DNA of 50,284 nucleotides, taken from the NCBI GenBank assembly GCA_000388065.2, contig KB932206.1. The stretch is one strand, 5' to 3'. Each line of letters starts with the position of its first letter. Positions within the stretch are counted from its first letter, which is position 1. A program made the translations under genes and the position numbers. Positions 10,691-22,204 of this stretch are shown one piece after another. The notes beneath the pieces are model-generated. The model saw only the letters and a list, made by a program, of their open reading frames with translations. It was not told the origin of the DNA and made no database searches. This DNA is from Fonticula alba ATCC 38817. Lineage: Eukaryota > Protista > Nucleariida.

Positions 10691-11688
10691 GGCTCCGTGC
10701 GGTTCCGGTGCGTTTTCCTCCTCGCCCCCTGTTGCCCCTTTGGCCCGGATGTGCTGGCGCTTGCCTTTCTGCCTGACTGACGTGTGTGTGTTCCGCCACA
10801 CATTGCACGCTGCTCGTCCTGGTGCCATGCACAGGCGCCTCCGCTCCATCCGGCGGCTGTAATCTCCCCAGGCGGTCTCATTCGCCCCACCTCCACACAT
10901 ACACACACACACAGCTCCCACCCCCCCCCCCCTCCCCCCTTGATGGGTAGCCACGCGCATGGGTAATAGAGCTCTCTCCCCCTGTCTCTGAGCCCTCCCA
11001 CGCGCTGGGTGTGCACCTGTCTCCCCCCTCTCAATAGACTCCTCCCCTTGATTTCATGCGTCGCTGTGTTGGGGATGTATGGTTTTATTTTCGTGCTCTT
11101 CTGACAGCGCCAGCACAGAGTGCATGCTCGGGAGCGCATGGTGCCTTCCCGGAGATCGGCGACCCCGAGAGGCAAGAGAGGAGGCGGCTCTTGGTGCTGG
11201 CTCCGAAAGGGGTGGCAGGGCCCACATGGACAGGTGGTTCTCCCGGGCTCTTTTTCCCTTTCTCCCTGTTTGTCTCTTCCGCCCTCGATTGAGCTGCCTT
11301 GCCTGGTGCAATCCGGCCGCGGGGAGCCGCGCCCAAAGTACGGGACCCGGCGAAGGGCAGGCAACGACAGAGGGGAGGCAGCACAAGAGTCGGAATGTGC
11401 AAGGGCACACATGCACGTATGGGGAACAACTTGTCCGCCATCTCCGTGACCGGCTGCCGCACCATTCTGTCTCACACTTACTCGCTTTGTTCCGGGAAGA
11501 CACGGCGCACAGTACGCGTCTCTGTGTGTGTGCGTGTGTGTGCACGTGCGCAGATGGACATACACACACGCGCAACCACAAATGAATGCGGCCTCGCATG
11601 GTGGCGGCGTGGCACCCTCCCAGGCGAAGGCCCCCCGCCCGCCCCCCGGCCATCGGAGGCAAGGCAGGCCCCCAGGCAGGAGAGCGGC

Positions 11689-16245
<4,557 letters not shown>

Positions 16246-18167
16246 GGCGGCAGTTAAAAGGTCGCGGAAGGGCGCGCTGCCAGCATGAAGGGGCGGTGAA
16301 AGGGCGACAGGAGGGGGGGAGGAGGAGGAGGAGAGGAGGGGACAGGGAGTGAGGAAGGGAGGGGGGGGGAGGGGAGAGGCAGGAGGAGATGGGCGTATGG
16401 GGCGGTCGGTGCTCCGAGTCGCTCGGGCCCCCCGGGCGAGGCCGCACCCCTTCAGCCACGGCGGGAGGCGGGGCGGGGAGGCCGGCGCGCGGAGGCGGCC
16501 AGGGCACACGGCCGGGCGTGCAGGCGGCCAGGGGGGCCAACGGAGAACCACGCCCGGGCGGACCAACAGGGCATGTTTACTTTTTTCCGGCCCATCTGCC
16601 GACAGATTGCCTGCCGCGTCAACTCGGGTGGGTGTGCGTGTCTGCGATCGCGCCGGGCCCCCGGGGCGGGGGGCCCCGCCGCCATCGTGACCGCGGCAAC
16701 TTTGGCGGCTTGTTCGGACACCCAGCGCGACGGACGCCGGAAAGGCCCCTCCCCCCCGCACCCGGCCGGGCGGTCGGCTGGCCGGCTGTCGGGCAAACAA
16801 GACGGTGTTGGCGCGCGCGCGCGCGCGCGCAGTGTGCGCGGCCGCCATGGCGCCGGCGCGTGGGGGGGCCCTTTCCGGCGCGCGGCCGCGGATGCCCCGG
16901 TGGTCGTGCGTGTCGGCGCCGGGCCACGCACATCGCCCGGTCCGCAGGCAGGTGGCACCAGTGTGCCGGGAGCCTGTCCGATCGCCGGGCGCCTGGCTGA
17001 CATGTCGCCGCGGCGGCCGGGTTCCCCCGGCTCCGCCCCCCGAGCACTGTGCCCCGCCCTGGCCACCACCCGGGCCACGACGACGCGCATCATCGCCGGC
17101 CCGCCGGGGCCGCTTTGTTATGCACGCGCGAACACGGGCCGGTGGTGCTTTGCCCAGTCATCCCCCCGACGGCACCTATCTCTCCCGCGCCCTCCGCCGG
17201 GGGCCGGCGGAAACCCAAGGGGACAGGGCGCCGCAGGCGTGTCCGCGCGCGCGCGCGCCCAGAGCCCGGCCGCAGGGGTTGGCACCGGCGCGAAGATAAG
17301 GGCCGATCTCGCCCACAGCCCGAGGGGCGCGAGGGGGCGCCTTCGGATTAGCCCGCCGGCCGGCCGGCAGCCCTGCCTCTGGAGCGCGGATGTCCGTGCG
17401 CGCTCCCGCCCCGGCTGGCACGGTCCCCCGGGGCACCCAACTCACCTCCCTTGGGCAGGTGCCCACGCAAAACGCCACGTTTTGAGATCGGAGAAGTTTA
17501 TTGGCGGCTTCTTTTGCCTGCGTGTGTGTGTGTGTTCGGGGGGGGCGGGGGGAGGGGGTCCCGTGTGCGCGTTTCCCACCTCCGGAGAGGGGGAAATATG
17601 CCACAAGGGACGAGGTATGCTGGATGGGCCCCGCGCGCGCGCGCGTCCATCCTCCCCGTCGGGCGTGCGGGGCCTCCCCGCGGCGTCCGGGGGGGGGGGG
17701 GGNNNNNNNNNNNNNNNNNNNNNNNNNNNNNNNNNNNNNNNNNNNNNNNNNNNNNNNNNNNNNNNNNNNNNNNNNNNNNNNNNNNNNNNNNNNNNNNNNN
17801 NNNNNNNNNNNNNNNNNNNNNNNNNNNNNNNNNNNNNNNNNNNNNNNNNNNNNNNNNNNNNNNNNNNNNNNNNNNNNNNNNNNNNNNNNNNNNNNNNNNN
17901 NNNNNNNNNNNNNNNNNNNNNNNNNNNNNNNNNNNNNNNNNNNNNNNNNNNNNNNNNNNNNNNNNNNNNAGGGGGGGGGAAACAAGGACAGCGGAGCCTG
18001 GGCAAGGGGGAAAGGATGATCTGCCAGGCAGGTGTGATGGGGGTGGCCGGGGCGCGGGGGATCGGGCAATGTGCACGAAGGGGGGGGGGGGGGGCCGCCG
18101 GCGGGGGCGGCCAGGAGCGACCAAATGCCCCACAAGCACCCCCCTCGCCCTCGCTCCACTCCCCGCG

Positions 18168-21100
18168 TTAGAAGAGGTACTGGTCATCCTCCTCCTGCCA
18201 GACATCCTGGCTCTGGTGGCGGATGCGCTCGCGCTCGATGATGGCGGCGCGCTCGCGCTCCTGGGCCTCCTGGATGCTGGTCGCCTGGCGGACCAGCTGT
18301 TCGCGCCGGCGTGGGAGGGCCGACTGCGCCAGGCCGGTGGTCGGCTGGTGGTATGGCTGCCGGGCCGAGGCTTCATCGACCGCGGCCCCGATCGTCGGGC
18401 CCACCACCAACATGGCCGTGGCGGCCGAGGGCTCCGCCTCGCCCTGGGCATTCGGACGGTGGGACCTGGCCGGCTGCCCGACGGTCTCCTCATCCACGGC
18501 ATCGAAGAAGGCCCGGAAGTTGCTGGCCGAATCGTAGCCCAGATACAGGGGCCGGGTGCGGGCCAGCCTGCCGGTCAGGAGGTCGTACGGGCTCCAAAAG
18601 CGCGCGGCCTTCGTCAGGGTCCGCTCGGCCGGAGTCGGCTGGGTGGGGATGAAGCCCGCCGACGAGTCATAGCCATCCAGGGCGGCCTGCGCATCGCGCA
18701 CCAGGCGCCCCAGATACTTGCGATACTTCTCCGGCAACAGGGACCGATACTTGGCGAAGAGGTCCTGCTGGAGCGAGGCCACCAGCTGGTCCTCATGCTG
18801 GTCCTCGGTCCAGGGAGCCGAGTCGACACCGGCGGCCGGGCCTGGGCCTGGCCGCCGCAGGCCGGACGCATGGTCATCCGCAGGGGGGTCATCGTGGAGC
18901 CAGGCAGCCCGAATGCTCGGGCCCATGTGAGCCTCGGCATCGAAATCCCCCTCGGACTCGGGGTCCGAGTCGGAGTAGGCATTTTCGTAGGAGCCGCCAT
19001 GGGGCGAGGCAGCACGGCGCCGGGCCAGGTCGGCGGCTTGGGCCGCCCGCTCGGCTTCCAGAGCACGCTCCTGGGCCATGCGTTCCGGCGACCAGGGCCG
19101 GAAGTCCGGCCGCGTGGCCAGGAAGGCCTCCTCGAACGTGGCGGCCATGATCCGGGGCGCGGCCACATCGACAAAGAACCGCAGGGCCGCCAGGCGCCGC
19201 GCGCGCACCCCCTCGGCCAGCCAAGCCCCGGAGGTGTCCCGGCCCAGCAGGGTCTGGAAGGGCTCCTTCACGGCCTGGAGCAGGTCGCGCGGGCAGATCT
19301 CGCTCGCCGGGTGCCGGCCACAGTACAGACACAGGCCGGCGGCCTGGCGCGCATGCCAGGCATCGCTCTCCAGGATCATGGCCTTGCCAAGGTGGCGGAC
19401 CTGATGCCGGTCCCGGAGCCGGGCACATGGCTCGGAGTTCATGTGCAGCCCGCAGAAGAGACACACCCCGGCCTTCATGCGGGTGCGGATGGTTCGCCGG
19501 GTGAGGGTCCGCTTGCCGTTGCGGAAAACAATCCCCGAGTGAAAGAGCGCCGGGCAAATTTCCGTCGACGGATGCCGGCCACAGTAGGAACACATGGCCG
19601 GATTCCTCCTCGACCGCGGGGCATGGGATGGTACGCCCTGGACCGAGGGGCCGCCGGCGGCCGCGGCCACCGGCTCGTGCGTCAAATAGCACGGCTCATC
19701 TTGCCGGTGCAGGCCGCACCGCATGCACAGGTGGAATTGCGCGCGGCGGCGCATTTCCCGCGGCAACAGCAGCAGCTGCCCATCCATGTAGGAGTACCCC
19801 TGGCGTCGGAGAAGCGGGCACTCGGTGGCCCGGGTGTGCATGCCGCACGCATCGCACAGGCCCAGCCCTCGGCGAGCATGCACCTCGCGGGCGGTGACCA
19901 GCAGCAGCCCATCGGACAGGCGCATCCCCCGGCGCGCCAGCCACGGGCACGCCTGGTCGGCCGGGTGCTGGAAGCAGAAGTGGCAAGTGTCCCCCGGGGC
20001 CGGGGCCGTGGGACCCACTGGCCGGAGGCCAGGGTCCGACTCCGGCGGCAGGGCCACATTCCACAAGCCAATGAGCGCCACATCGTGCCCTCGATGGGGG
20101 GACTTCGGCAGGAGGATCGCCCCCTCCAGGGGCGGGGGGGAACCCCCGGCGGGGGGACCCCCCGTCGTGGCGGCGGCCGCCGCAAGATGGGCATGGGTTG
20201 TCCGGTCCGGCGCCAGCAGCACCGGCCCCTGGAATGCCTTGCTCATGGCCGGGCATGGCCGGTCGAGCGGGTGCCGCCCGCAGAAGATACACACCCGAAG
20301 GGACAGCCGATCTTCACGGGCCTGCCGCGTCAGGAGCCGGAACCGGTAGATGAAGTCCACCCCCTCCCGGCGCAACTGCGGGCATGGCTGATCATCCAGG
20401 TGGTCCAGGCAGATGGGGCATGCCCGGGCAGATGGCTGGTCGGGCCCCGACGAGCATGCGGCCGCCGTCGGGCCCGTCGAGGAGGGATGCAGCTGCTGGC
20501 CAGTGTAGGGGAAAGCCAGGCCCGGGGTGGCATGCTCGTCATCCGGCAAGAAGGGGCATGCTTGGTAGATGGGGTGCAGGCCACACACGGCGCACCGGCC
20601 CAGCTGCACACGCCGGGCGTAGAAGGCCATGCCGGCCGGGCCGGGGGGAAGGTCCAGCAAATGGCCGCGCCTCAGCAAACGTGGACAGATCAGCTCGGCC
20701 GGGTGCTCGGCGCAAAAGGTGCACAGCAGCTCCGGGTACTGGACATCCGGCTCGGGGGAGGCGGTTGGCTCCGGCAGGGGGAGCCCATCTGCCGGGTGCG
20801 GCTCCAGCTGCTGGGAGGCGGCCTCCTGCAGCAGGCTGGCCAGGGCGTCCAGAGACTGGCGCCCGGCCAGCTCACTGACCGAGAAGACATGCTGGATGCC
20901 GTATTGGTTCAGGGCAAAGTCGAGGAGAGGGATCCCGGTTTGGGGACTACCGGGGGGGGGNNNNNNNNNNNNNNNNNNNNNNNNNNNNNNNNNNNNNNNN
21001 NNNNNNNNNNNNNNNNNNNNNNNNNNNNNNNNNNNNNNNNNNNNNNNNNNNNNNNNNNNNNNNNNNNNNNNNNNNNNNNNNNNNNNNNNNNNNNNNNNNN

Positions 21101-21401
21101 NNNNNNNNNNNNNNNNNNNGGGGGGGGGGGGGAAGCATCGACGCAGGCCGAGGGAGAGAGGAAGGAAGAGAAGCTGCTGCATGATGGCGGCGCACGGGGG
21201 AGAAGGAGATGACCAATTCGGGGCGATCCCCGGGAAGAGGGGCACCAGGGGCGGCCCTGCCTCATGGTGATGGCCGTGCTCATGATCCGAGCAGGAGCAG
21301 GGTCCCGCAAGGGTGCTGGCAAGACGCCGGTACGCCGACGCGCGTGGCCCCGAAAAACATGCTCTTCTCACAGGGGGCTTTGAGAGGAGGGCGCGCAGCA
21401 T
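18168..21401 (-). CDS. Uncharacterised protein with ten CX2CX2HX5C zinc-finger-like repeats; possible mitochondrial presequence
   Basis: Open frame 18168-20960 containing 10 regularly spaced C/H motifs (19293-20723) followed by a helical, charged C-terminus. Putative start MLRALLSKPPVRR at 21401 lies across gap 20961-21119, so its linkage is inferred. Confidence 0.75.
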   Translation of the reverse strand: MLRALLSKPPVRRACFSGPRASAYRRLASTLAGPCSCSDHEHGHHHEAGPPLVPLFPGIAPNWSSPSPPCAAIMQQLLFLPLSLGLRRCFPPPPXXXXXXXXXXXXXXXXXXXXXXXXXXXXXXXXXXXXXXXXXXXXXXXXXXXXXPPPGSPQTGIPLLDFALNQYGIQHVFSVSELAGRQSLDALASLLQEAASQQLEPHPADGLPLPEPTASPEPDVQYPELLCTFCAEHPAELICPRLLRRGHLLDLPPGPAGMAFYARRVQLGRCAVCGLHPIYQACPFLPDDEHATPGLAFPYTGQQLHPSSTGPTAAACSSGPDQPSARACPICLDHLDDQPCPQLRREGVDFIYRFRLLTRQAREDRLSLRVCIFCGRHPLDRPCPAMSKAFQGPVLLAPDRTTHAHLAAAAATTGGPPAGGSPPPLEGAILLPKSPHRGHDVALIGLWNVALPPESDPGLRPVGPTAPAPGDTCHFCFQHPADQACPWLARRGMRLSDGLLLVTAREVHARRGLGLCDACGMHTRATECPLLRRQGYSYMDGQLLLLPREMRRRAQFHLCMRCGLHRQDEPCYLTHEPVAAAAGGPSVQGVPSHAPRSRRNPAMCSYCGRHPSTEICPALFHSGIVFRNGKRTLTRRTIRTRMKAGVCLFCGLHMNSEPCARLRDRHQVRHLGKAMILESDAWHARQAAGLCLYCGRHPASEICPRDLLQAVKEPFQTLLGRDTSGAWLAEGVRARRLAALRFFVDVAAPRIMAATFEEAFLATRPDFRPWSPERMAQERALEAERAAQAADLARRRAASPHGGSYENAYSDSDPESEGDFDAEAHMGPSIRAAWLHDDPPADDHASGLRRPGPGPAAGVDSAPWTEDQHEDQLVASLQQDLFAKYRSLLPEKYRKYLGRLVRDAQAALDGYDSSAGFIPTQPTPAERTLTKAARFWSPYDLLTGRLARTRPLYLGYDSASNFRAFFDAVDEETVGQPARSHRPNAQGEAEPSAATAMLVVGPTIGAAVDEASARQPYHQPTTGLAQSALPRRREQLVRQATSIQEAQERERAAIIERERIRHQSQDVWQEEDDQYLF

Positions 21402-22204
21402 GCTACCCGTCGGCCGGGGAGGGGGGGGGGGGGCGCCCTCAGAGCACCAACCGGCGAGTTCTCCGCACGCGACGATCCCGCGGGGTGCGGGGGGCAATGG
21501 GGCCAGGCGGCAGGGGTTGCGGCGGGGATGGCGGCGGCGGCGGCAGCGGCAGCGGCGGCGGTCGCACGGCGGTGAAGGAAGGGGAGAGGGAGCAGAAGCA
21601 AGGGTAGAGAGAGAGAGGGGAGGGGGGAGGAGGGAGAATCACACACCCGTGGCCATGGGTGGACCGACTCCGACGGGAGAAGGAGGCGGAAGGGTGGCGG
21701 AGGCAAAAACCAAAACGGCAGGGAAAAGTGGCCGGGGAGGGGGAGGAGGAGGAGGGATGTCTGTATCAAGGCTCGCCCATGCCATGCGACCATTGCCCGG
21801 CGGCGCTTCAGATCCGACCAGCACAGGGGCCACGCACGACCTGTCGCCGGTTCACGTACATATCCACGCACGCATGCACATCCCCCCCCGNNNNNNNNNN
21901 NNNNNNNNNNNNNNNNNNNNNNNNNNNNNNNNNNNNNNNNNNNNNNNNNNNNNNNNNNNNNNNNNNNNNNNNNNNNNNNNNNNNNNNNNNNNNNNNNNNN
22001 NNNNNNNNNNNNNNNNNNNNNNNNNNNNNNNNNNNNNNNNNNNNNNNNNNNNNNNNNNNNNNNNNNNNNNNNNNNNNNNNNNNNNNNNNNNNNNNNNNNN
22101 NNNNNNNNNNNNNNNNNNNNNNNNNNNNNNNNNNNNNNNNNNNNNNNNNNNNNNNNNNNNNNNNNNNNNNNNNNNNNNNNNNNNNNNNNNNNNNNNNNNN
22201 NNNN

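What the first reader, a model, noticed from the sequence alone, without database searches (positions are those of the whole stretch)
19293..20723. Ten-copy array of an unusual CX2CX2HX5C zinc-finger repeat with a fixed 43-aa period
Seen: ten motifs with identical spacing (CTFCAEHPAELIC, CAVCGLHPIYQAC, CPICLDHLDDQPC, CIFCGRHPLDRPC, CHFCFQHPADQAC, CDACGMHTRATEC, CMRCGLHRQDEPC, CSYCGRHPSTEIC, CLFCGLHMNSEPC, CLYCGRHPASEIC). They are grouped 2+2+3+3. Linkers within a group are 30 aa (five cases) or 31 aa (one case) and share roughly P-x-L-x-R-x-G-h-x-h-x-[DN]-G...L-T...R-x3-G-L. Linkers between groups are variable and low-complexity. Known: the canonical knuckle is CX2CX4HX4C, and I do not recognise this spacing as a named family. 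Inference: a modular, Arg-rich nucleic-acid-binding repeat protein, possibly a sequence-reading RNA binder.
Basis: partly seen in the sequence, partly recalled or inferred. Interest (0 to 1): 0.85.

Follow-up and report, generated by a model that had tools for sequence, protein, structure and literature searches.

The report
Ten-unit re-spaced zinc-knuckle array gene
This transcribed, apparently unannotated gene of the amoeba Fonticula alba encodes ten copies of an undescribed Cys-Cys-His-Cys zinc-knuckle module that resembles the RNA-gripping part of a retrotransposon coat protein and probably binds nucleic acid.

Summary
Ten C-x2-C-x2-H-x5-C motifs lie in one minus-strand frame at 19293-20723, and there are none in any other frame of the window. 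About 0.03 would be expected by chance.

They lie in an open, intronless, transcribed reading frame (18168-20960) that runs 5' into an assembly gap.

The protein belongs to a family seen only in Fonticula alba. An exhaustive HMMER search of 1.84 billion representative proteins found three F. alba hypothetical proteins and, more weakly, one fish array of canonical knuckles. No Pfam model, solved structure or paper matches the spacing.

AlphaFold2 models the 43-aa unit confidently as knuckle, short helix, beta-hairpin, helix, next knuckle.

The helix-plus-knuckle part resembles the Ty3/gypsy Gag nucleocapsid module: profile-profile probability is 95.6%, weak fold matches are mostly Gag proteins, and one family unit keeps the canonical spacing.

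My best reading is a host gene family built by capture, re-spacing and tandem amplification of a Gag nucleocapsid module, acting as a multivalent binder of single-stranded nucleic acid. Zinc binding, nucleic-acid binding, sequence specificity and location are all untested.

The scan had already noted this stretch once (s1-065945) and the same module at nine or more other loci of this genome.

The parts
18168..20960 (-). Open reading frame of 930 codons plus stop (stop at 18168-18170). It is open at its 5' end into the assembly gap, so the start codon is not defined.
   Evidence: Codon-position GC is 0.73/0.54/0.85 and even along the whole length. Exact, unspliced RNA contigs lie between 18261 and 20929 in four runs.
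20556..20723 (-). Knuckle group 1 (units 1-2, period 43 aa)
20421..20555 (-). 45-aa spacer between groups 1 and 2; it does not fit the linker consensus
20253..20420 (-). Knuckle group 2 (units 3-4, period 43 aa)
19986..20252 (-). 89-aa low-complexity (Ala/Pro/Gly-rich) spacer between groups 2 and 3
19689..19985 (-). Knuckle group 3 (units 5-7, period 43 aa). Units 5-6 were modelled.
   Evidence: The AlphaFold2 model has pLDDT 87-94 over the knuckle-linker-knuckle part.
19593..19688 (-). 32-aa spacer between groups 3 and 4
19293..19592 (-). Knuckle group 4 (units 8-10, periods 43 and 44 aa)
18171..19292 (-). C-terminal half without Cys: net acidic, predicted helical or disordered, ending in a long helix. 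No relatives were found.
   Evidence: Composition. No homologues, no Atlas lead. The single-sequence AlphaFold2 model is poor (pLDDT 51, helices only).
20961..21119 (.). Assembly gap (159 N) flanked by homopolymer C. It hides the 5' part of the gene, so reading in frame across it means nothing.
21120..21401 (-). Possible 5' coding piece starting with an ATG at 21401. Its first 33 residues have 7 Arg/Lys and no Asp/Glu, like a mitochondrial presequence. Its link to the gene is unproven.
   Evidence: Codon-position GC is weak (0.68/0.62/0.71). RNA contigs hardly cover it.

Best explanation
The stretch is the core of a transcribed, intronless host gene, very probably of Fonticula alba. It is one member of a dispersed family found so far only in that species.

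Each 43-45-aa unit is a Cys3-His zinc knuckle with the spacing C-x2-C-x2-H-x5-C. It sits on a small scaffold of short helix, beta-hairpin and basic helix.

The basic helix plus knuckle (L-[ST]-x2-E-x2-R-R-x3-G-L-C-x-[YF]-C-G) most likely derives from the nucleocapsid end of a Ty3/gypsy retrotransposon Gag. Two residues were lost before the His and one was gained after it, and the module was then amplified in tandem.

Inferred mechanism: each unit binds one Zn. It grips a few exposed bases of single-stranded RNA or DNA with the aromatic residue inside the first C-x2-C and with the Arg-rich helix. Rigid blocks of two or three units, joined by flexible low-complexity spacers, give multivalent and possibly chaperone-like binding. 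The acidic, helical C-terminal half would be an effector or oligomerisation part.

Shown: the motif array, family membership, transcription, the predicted fold of the unit, and the similarity to Gag-type helix-knuckle modules.

Inferred only: zinc binding, nucleic-acid binding, the Gag origin, and any target.

Family:
- phmmer against 1.84 billion representatives gave only four hits.
- Three are F. alba hypothetical proteins: H696_05279 (E 5.9e-40), H696_02790 (E 4.3e-24) and H696_00495 (E 5.3e-05).
- They lie on three different scaffolds, among ordinary host genes, with no RT, protease or integrase nearby. Two are intronless.
- The 43-45-aa period and the grouping in twos to fours recur in these proteins.

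Transcription:
- The four runs are true RNA. In the neighbouring GFAT gene their contigs skip five GT-AG introns, and the intergenic DNA is empty.
- Exact unspliced contigs from the same runs lie between 18261 and 20929, and the flanks are empty.

Fold:
- AlphaFold2 on an 18-row alignment of two-unit segments gave pLDDT 78.6 overall and 87-94 in the structured part. The order is knuckle, helix, hairpin, helix, knuckle.

Gag link:
- hhalign of the 31-unit profile against the fish knuckle unit gave probability 95.6% and E 1.1e-8 over 37 columns, with no gap from the linker into C-x2-C-G.
- The unit HMM scores the fish units at 19-24 bits. Ninety phage canonical knuckles that share C-x-Y-C-G..GH....CP score a mean of 8 bits.
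- Foldseek against AlphaFold DB clusters, and the ESM Atlas shape search, mostly return Ty3/gypsy Gag proteins for residues about 51-80. Rmsd is about 2 A and identity 24-40%, but E is above 1.
- One unit of H696_02790 keeps the canonical C-x2-C-x4-H-x4-C spacing.

From established knowledge:
- CCHC knuckles with an aromatic residue in the first C-x2-C and a Gly after the second Cys bind exposed bases in retroviral nucleocapsids such as those of HIV-1 and MoMLV.
Against: - No experiment and no coordinates were available, so Zn geometry for the shortened C-x2-H spacer is unchecked.
- All structure-search matches are statistically weak (E > 1, TM < 0.5), and VIA-align found nothing.
- The family profile does not hit any nucleocapsid in the PDB or any Pfam knuckle model.
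- The fish protein is not itself shown by a tool to be Gag-derived. Its locus shows only knuckle arrays and a distant reverse-transcriptase ORF on the other strand. That its flanking motif is typical of Ty3/gypsy Gag rests on my own knowledge.
- Lineage-specific zinc modules can also serve protein-protein contacts.
- The N-terminus is hidden by a gap.
Confidence: 0.55

Rival explanations
1. Same protein and same nucleic-acid-binding role, but the module arose from ordinary cellular CCHC knuckles (CNBP/Gis2/Air-type) or de novo. The likeness to Gag would then be convergence on 'basic helix plus knuckle'.
For: No Pfam Gag or capsid domain in any member. All fold matches are weak. The family profile finds no nucleocapsid in the PDB. 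The similarity is short, at 37 columns.
Against: The match to the fish unit keeps one register, without gaps, across L(-14), E(-10), RR(-7/-6), G(-2), L(-1) and C-x-Y-C-G. Canonical knuckles lacking that helix score about 14 bits lower. The named fold matches are mostly Ty3/gypsy Gag proteins, not cellular knuckle proteins.
Confidence: 0.2
2. The knuckles are zinc-stabilised protein-protein interaction modules, as in FOG-type CCHC fingers or LIM/Stc1-like adaptors. The protein would be a scaffold, not a nucleic-acid binder.
For: The structured 30-aa linker and the rigid pairs and triplets are unlike the flexible bead-on-a-string knuckles of CNBP. There are weak feature and fold mentions of Stc1-like proteins. 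The C-terminal half is acidic.
Against: The finger region has a net positive charge, with 63 basic and 46 acidic residues. An Arg is near-invariant at -6 (24 of 30 units). An aromatic residue at +2 and a Gly at +4 are nucleocapsid hallmarks. The best sequence and fold likenesses are to nucleocapsid-type modules.
Confidence: 0.15
3. It is the Gag or ORF1 of an undescribed or decayed transposable element, not a host gene.
For: Gag-like module; intronless ORF; the earlier notes of the scan report Ty3/gypsy-type LTR elements in this genome.
Against: No reverse transcriptase, protease, integrase or capsid domain lies in or next to any of the four loci. Family members are only 27-40% identical, differ in architecture, are single-copy and have ordinary neighbours. 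No repeat of this gene occurs elsewhere in the window.
Confidence: 0.06
4. It is a chance ORF of a GC-rich genome or a dead gene.
For: GC-rich DNA gives long ORFs in many frames. A 1253-aa ORF runs on the opposite strand across the same DNA.
Against: Ten exact motifs against 0.03 expected. The units are recognised by an HMM built from other proteins. Codon-position GC is strong and uniform. The ORF is transcribed.
Confidence: 0.02

Closest known systems
Retroviral / Ty3-gypsy Gag nucleocapsid zinc knuckle (Pfam zf-CCHC PF00098, C-x2-C-x4-H-x4-C)
   Same: Same Cys-Cys-His-Cys ligand set. An aromatic residue inside the first C-x2-C, a Gly after the second Cys and a Pro after the last Cys. A preceding basic helix with E..RR....L in the same register. 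The named weak fold matches are mostly Ty3/gypsy Gag proteins.
   Different: The spacing is C-x2-C-x2-H-x5-C. No Pfam knuckle model matches. There are ten units per protein instead of one or two. There is no capsid domain and no pol. It is a host gene among ordinary neighbours.
Cellular multi-knuckle proteins (CNBP/ZNF9, yeast Gis2, trypanosomatid UMSBP/HEXBP, Air1/2, ZCCHC3)
   Same: Tandem arrays of CCHC knuckles in host proteins that bind single-stranded nucleic acids. [quoted passage not shown]
   Different: By my knowledge, those have the canonical spacing, short flexible linkers (period about 20-25 aa) and small size. Here the period is 43-45 aa with a folded alpha/beta linker, the units form blocks of two to four, and there is a large orphan C-terminal half.
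Anabas testudineus LOC113155357 (P0003), a tandem array of canonical knuckle units with an 89-aa period
   Same: A repeated 'linker helix plus knuckle' unit. It is the only hit outside Fonticula in 1.84 billion proteins (E 3.1e-9). hhalign probability is 95.6%.
   Different: It has the canonical C-x2-C-x4-H-x4-C spacing and is recognised by Pfam. Its units are nearly identical, so the amplification is recent and satellite-like. The period is different.
Organellar repeat RNA binders (PPR, OPR, HPR)
   Same: An analogy only. They are lineage-expanded families of tandem 35-45-aa units, and some members here have presequence-like N-termini.
   Different: Those are all-helical folds without metal, and there is no homology. 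One member here (H696_00495) has an acidic N-terminus, and the N-terminus of the window's gene is unknown.

Membership tests
Pfam zf-CCHC (PF00098) retroviral-type zinc knuckle | C-x2-C-x4-H-x4-C spacing | tested here: not met
   None of the 10 units here has it. One of 32 family units does (H696_02790, residue 393).
Pfam zf-CCHC (PF00098) retroviral-type zinc knuckle | Match to the family HMM at its gathering score | tested here: not met
   No zf-CCHC family appears at E <= 1 for this protein or for the three F. alba relatives. The fish control matches nine knuckle-type families.
Pfam zf-CCHC (PF00098) retroviral-type zinc knuckle | Cys-Cys-His-Cys ligands that bind one Zn | not testable with these tools
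   The four ligand columns are invariant in 31 units. Metal binding itself needs experiment.
Ty3/gypsy Gag (Retrotrans_gag PF03732 / Ty3_capsid PF19259) | Capsid domain upstream of the knuckle | tested here: not met
   No Pfam hit.
Ty3/gypsy Gag (Retrotrans_gag PF03732 / Ty3_capsid PF19259) | Lies in an element with protease, reverse transcriptase and integrase | tested here: not met
   The called genes around the three relatives are ordinary host genes. The nearest neighbour in the window is GFAT.
Ty3/gypsy Gag (Retrotrans_gag PF03732 / Ty3_capsid PF19259) | C-terminal basic helix plus knuckle motif | tested here: inconclusive
   hhalign probability of 95.6% to a fish knuckle unit. The weak fold matches are mostly Gag proteins. 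No curated Gag profile was available to compare.
CNBP/Gis2/UMSBP multi-knuckle proteins | Canonical knuckles separated by short linkers | tested here: not met
   The period is 43-45 aa with a folded linker, and the spacing is non-canonical. No such protein is among the hits.
Fonticula C-x2-C-x2-H-x5-C array family (H696_05279, H696_02790, H696_00495) | Significant full-sequence similarity | tested here: met
   E-values of 5.9e-40, 4.3e-24 and 5.3e-05.
Fonticula C-x2-C-x2-H-x5-C array family (H696_05279, H696_02790, H696_00495) | Units recognised by a unit HMM built without this protein | tested here: met
   10 of 10 units found, 233.7 bits in total; shuffled controls reach at most 6.1 bits.

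The most novel reading that the evidence does not exclude
The family is a new class of modular, base-reading RNA-binding repeat. It would have been built from a captured retrotransposon nucleocapsid module, with each 43-aa unit specifying one or a few nucleotides, as PPR and PUF repeats do. Some members (H696_05279, H696_02790 and perhaps this gene) would be imported into mitochondria to act on organellar transcripts.
Probability: 0.12. Interest if true: 0.85.

Novelty: new variant of a known kind. Interest (0 to 1): 0.58.

Why it matters
If the reading holds, this is an unusual case of retroelement domestication. What was captured and multiplied is not a whole Gag but its small RNA-gripping module, which became arrays of 4 to about 18 units across roughly ten host genes in one protist lineage.

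It would add a new metal-site spacing and a new folded 43-aa scaffold to the zinc-knuckle repertoire. It would also give a compact, repetitive module that could be tested for designable recognition of single-stranded nucleic acid.

The gene also appears to be missing from public protein sets, so the family is under-annotated.

Tried and rejected
**Searches that found nothing**
- Two word-seeded homologue searches, one on the finger region and one on the C-terminal half, found nothing, not even the gene's own product. They were swamped by low-complexity candidates. Together, this suggests the gene is unannotated.
- A third search, on one fish unit, returned only the query itself, so I could not collect true Gag sequences for a profile.
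- Pfam gave nothing for any family member.
- A PDB sequence search with the unit profile gave only chance-level rows.
- Foldseek against PDB, VIA-align wide and Swiss-Prot models gave nothing usable.
- ESM Atlas feature searches of the fingers and of the C-terminal half gave no score above 0.73.
- Rfam and tRNA scans of the window were empty.
- Literature searches for the spacing, and for Fonticula with zinc fingers or knuckles, found nothing relevant.

**Other attempts**
- The C-terminal half was modelled from its single sequence. pLDDT was 51, so I did not use it for fold search.
- A degenerate DNA pattern for C-x-[FY]-C-G-x-H-P-x5-C-P was scanned over the metagenome contigs. It gave 31 loci with one motif each, about the number I estimated for chance; many have stops in frame and none has an array.
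- The fish locus was inspected for Gag or pol. It holds only more knuckle units and a distant reverse-transcriptase ORF on the other strand.

**Ideas rejected**
- A heme C-x2-C-H motif: the spacing is wrong.
- Disulfide-rich secreted repeats: the His is invariant, and the ORF as far as it can be read shows no signal peptide.
- An active transposable element: see the rival explanations.
Full report
**1. The observation**

A regex scan of all six frames finds exactly ten C-x2-C-x2-H-x5-C motifs.

Start-to-start spacings are 43, 58, 43, 102, 43, 43, 45, 43 and 44 residues. This gives blocks of 2+2+3+3, with within-block linkers of 30 aa (five) or 31 aa (one).

Shuffling the window gives a mean of 0.03 motifs. 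Shuffling the protein region gives 0.0025. Of the 31 cysteines in the translated ORF, 30 are motif ligands. At the DNA level the copies have diverged too far for Tandem Repeats Finder to see them, so the array is old.

**2. The gene**

The motifs lie in a minus-strand ORF that runs from an assembly gap (159 N at 20961-21119, flanked by homopolymer C) to a stop at 18168-18170.

Codon-position GC is 0.73/0.54/0.85 and uniform over all 930 codons, including the Cys-free C-terminal 370 residues. The 1253-aa ORF on the opposite strand is a by-product of the GC-rich DNA.

Four small runs of 2012 are true RNA. In the neighbouring GFAT gene (11600-15810, minus strand) their contigs skip five GT-AG introns, and the intergenic DNA at 15868-17400 is empty. 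Exact unspliced contigs from the same runs lie between 18261 and 20929, and the flanks are empty. So the ORF is transcribed, and no intron is seen in the parts the contigs cover.

The 5' end is hidden by the gap. An upstream ATG at 21401 opens a presequence-like peptide with 7 Arg/Lys and no acidic residue in its first 33 residues. Its codon-position signal is weak and RNA contigs hardly cover it, so its link to the gene is unproven.

The gene's own product did not appear in any protein search. It therefore seems to be missing from public protein sets.

**3. The family**

An exhaustive phmmer search of 1.84 billion representative proteins returned only four hits:
- H696_05279 of Fonticula alba: 932 aa, ten units, E 5.9e-40.
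- H696_02790 of F. alba: 1213 aa, eight units, E 4.3e-24.
- H696_00495 of F. alba: 384 aa, four units, E 5.3e-05.
- A fish protein, Anabas testudineus LOC113155357, E 3.1e-9.

The names come and the unit counts.

The three F. alba genes sit on three different scaffolds among ordinary host genes, with no reverse transcriptase, protease or integrase nearby. Two are intronless. A unit HMM finds no extra units in their 10-kb flanks. An HMM built from those three proteins alone recognises all ten units of the window's protein, at 233.7 bits against at most 6.1 bits for shuffled controls.

The modal period of 43-45 aa, and the blocks of two to four units, recur in all members.

No Pfam model matches any member, not even the zinc-knuckle models. 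No paper in the library mentions the spacing. A degenerate DNA pattern for the knuckle, scanned over the metagenome contigs, gave 31 single-motif loci. That is about the number I estimated for chance, and none is an array.

Earlier notes of this scan describe the same module at nine or more other loci of this genome. Judged by their lengths of 3642 and 1155 letters, two of those notes are the genes of H696_02790 and H696_00495. The notes also include this same stretch read from another window. I could not fetch the other loci, so the family size of about ten is hearsay from unchecked notes.

**4. Anatomy of the unit**

Across 30 units the consensus is L-[ST]-x2-E-x2-R-R-x3-G-L-**C**-x-[YF]-**C**-G-x-**H**-P-x3-P-**C**-P-x-L-L-R-x-G.

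| Feature | Units with it |
|---|---|
| The four ligands (Cys, Cys, His, Cys) | invariant |
| Arg at -6 | 24 of 30 |
| Gly after the second Cys | 23 of 30 |
| Pro after the last Cys | 20 of 30 |
| Aromatic residue at +2 | 16 of 30 |

AlphaFold2 was run on an 18-row alignment of two-unit segments. Mean pLDDT is 78.6, and 87-94 over the part from the first knuckle to the second. The order is knuckle, short helix, beta-hairpin, ten-residue helix, next knuckle, short helix. The 30-aa linker is therefore predicted to be folded, not a flexible tether. The spacers between blocks are low-complexity.

The C-terminal half has no relatives. From a single sequence it models only as low-confidence helices.

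**5. What it resembles**

Solved structures give no match by sequence or by fold.

The AlphaFold DB cluster search gives only weak rows, with E above 1. Most of the named rows that align residues about 51-80 (helix plus knuckle), at about 2 A rmsd and 24-40% identity, are retrotransposon Gag or Ty3-gypsy proteins. The ESM Atlas shape search again lists clusters carrying Retrotrans_gag and Ty3_capsid.

At the sequence level, the 31-unit profile aligns with the fish unit at 95.6% probability (E 1.1e-8) over 37 columns. There is no gap from the P-L-L...G start of the linker through E..RR....L to C-x-Y-C-G. The alignment stops where the spacing changes.

As a control, 90 phage canonical knuckles carrying the same C-x-Y-C-G..GH....CP core score a mean of 8 bits against the unit HMM. 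The fish units score 19-24 bits. The likeness therefore lies largely in the upstream helix, not only in the cysteines.

One unit of H696_02790 still has the canonical C-x2-C-x4-H-x4-C spacing behind the same helix. It looks like a relic of the ancestral form.

That the L-[ST]-x2-E-x2-R-R-x4-L-C-x-Y-C-G motif is typical of Ty3/gypsy Gag C-termini is my own knowledge. I could not fetch curated Gag sequences to test it. The fish locus itself shows only more knuckle units and a distant reverse-transcriptase ORF on the other strand.

**6. Mechanism**

I commit to this reading, at about 0.55. The gene encodes a multivalent binder of single-stranded nucleic acid. Its units descend from a Ty3/gypsy nucleocapsid module that was re-spaced and amplified.

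By analogy with retroviral nucleocapsids (established knowledge), each knuckle would bind one Zn and clasp exposed bases with the +2 aromatic residue and the Arg-rich helix. The rigid blocks of two or three units, joined by flexible spacers, would give avidity and possibly RNA-chaperone activity.

Zinc binding, the ligand preference, any sequence code and the role of the C-terminal half are all inferred, not shown.

Mitochondrial import is possible for some members. H696_05279 has no acidic residue in its first 62 residues, and an in-frame stop lies 14 codons upstream of its Met. H696_02790 is similar. But H696_00495 starts with an acidic stretch, and the GC-rich genome makes Arg-rich N-termini common. 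I rate mitochondrial import at about 0.3.

**7. Rivals**

- Convergent or cellular-knuckle origin: 0.2.
- Protein-protein interaction scaffold: 0.15.
- Transposable-element Gag or ORF1: 0.06.
- Chance ORF: 0.02.

The evidence for and against each is in the Rival explanations section.

**8. Novelty and verdict**

The ligand chemistry and the idea of knuckle arrays are known. New are the C-x2-C-x2-H-x5-C spacing, the folded 43-aa scaffold, the block architecture, the probable origin by amplification of a Gag nucleocapsid module, and the restriction to one nucleariid-related amoeba. I file it as a new variant of a known kind.

Its interpretation is partly supported.

Interest is moderate to high. 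It is a clean and testable new zinc module and a possible new mode of retroelement domestication. But its function is unknown, and so far it is known from one species only.

Noticed in passing
window 11600-15810 (minus strand): The neighbouring gene is glutamine-fructose-6-phosphate aminotransferase (GFAT). RNA contigs confirm GT-AG introns at 12157-12424, 12554-12691, 12823-13099, 13780-13970 and 15613-15744. They also carry 140 letters across the 600-N gap at 14765-15364.
   Followed up: partly
window 17451-21212 (plus strand): A 1253-aa ORF runs antisense across the whole gene. It is a by-product of the GC-rich DNA, and gene callers could be misled by it.
   Followed up: partly
window N runs (for example 17703-17969, 20961-21119, 21891-22204): The N runs inspected (for example 20961-21119) are flanked by homopolymer C or G, so they look like assembly gaps at homopolymers. 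Gene models next to them, including this gene's 5' end, are unreliable.
   Followed up: partly
L035, L039, L045 and about 100 other IMG/VR loci: A conserved phage ORF carries two tandem canonical CCHC knuckles (C-T-Y-C-G-S-x-L-H-x4-C-P ... C-G-Y-C-G-Q-S-G-H-x4-C-P).
   Followed up: no
P0002 (H696_02790) residues about 457-606; L002: A perfect tandem duplication of about 70 aa lies between the first and second knuckle blocks. It is either a recent duplication or an assembly artefact. The first unit of this protein (residue 393) keeps the canonical C-x2-C-x4-H-x4-C spacing, and one unit (residue 931) has H-x6-C.
   Followed up: partly
L155 10001-14031 (Anabas testudineus): The fish 'protein' is a satellite-like array of more than 11 nearly identical 89-aa knuckle units, and the array continues into the next ORF. 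It may be an amplified retroelement fragment annotated as a gene.
   Followed up: partly
L001 5175-7666: The gene about 2.3 kb upstream of H696_05279 encodes a DnaJ protein with weak PPR matches. This is probably a coincidence.
   Followed up: no
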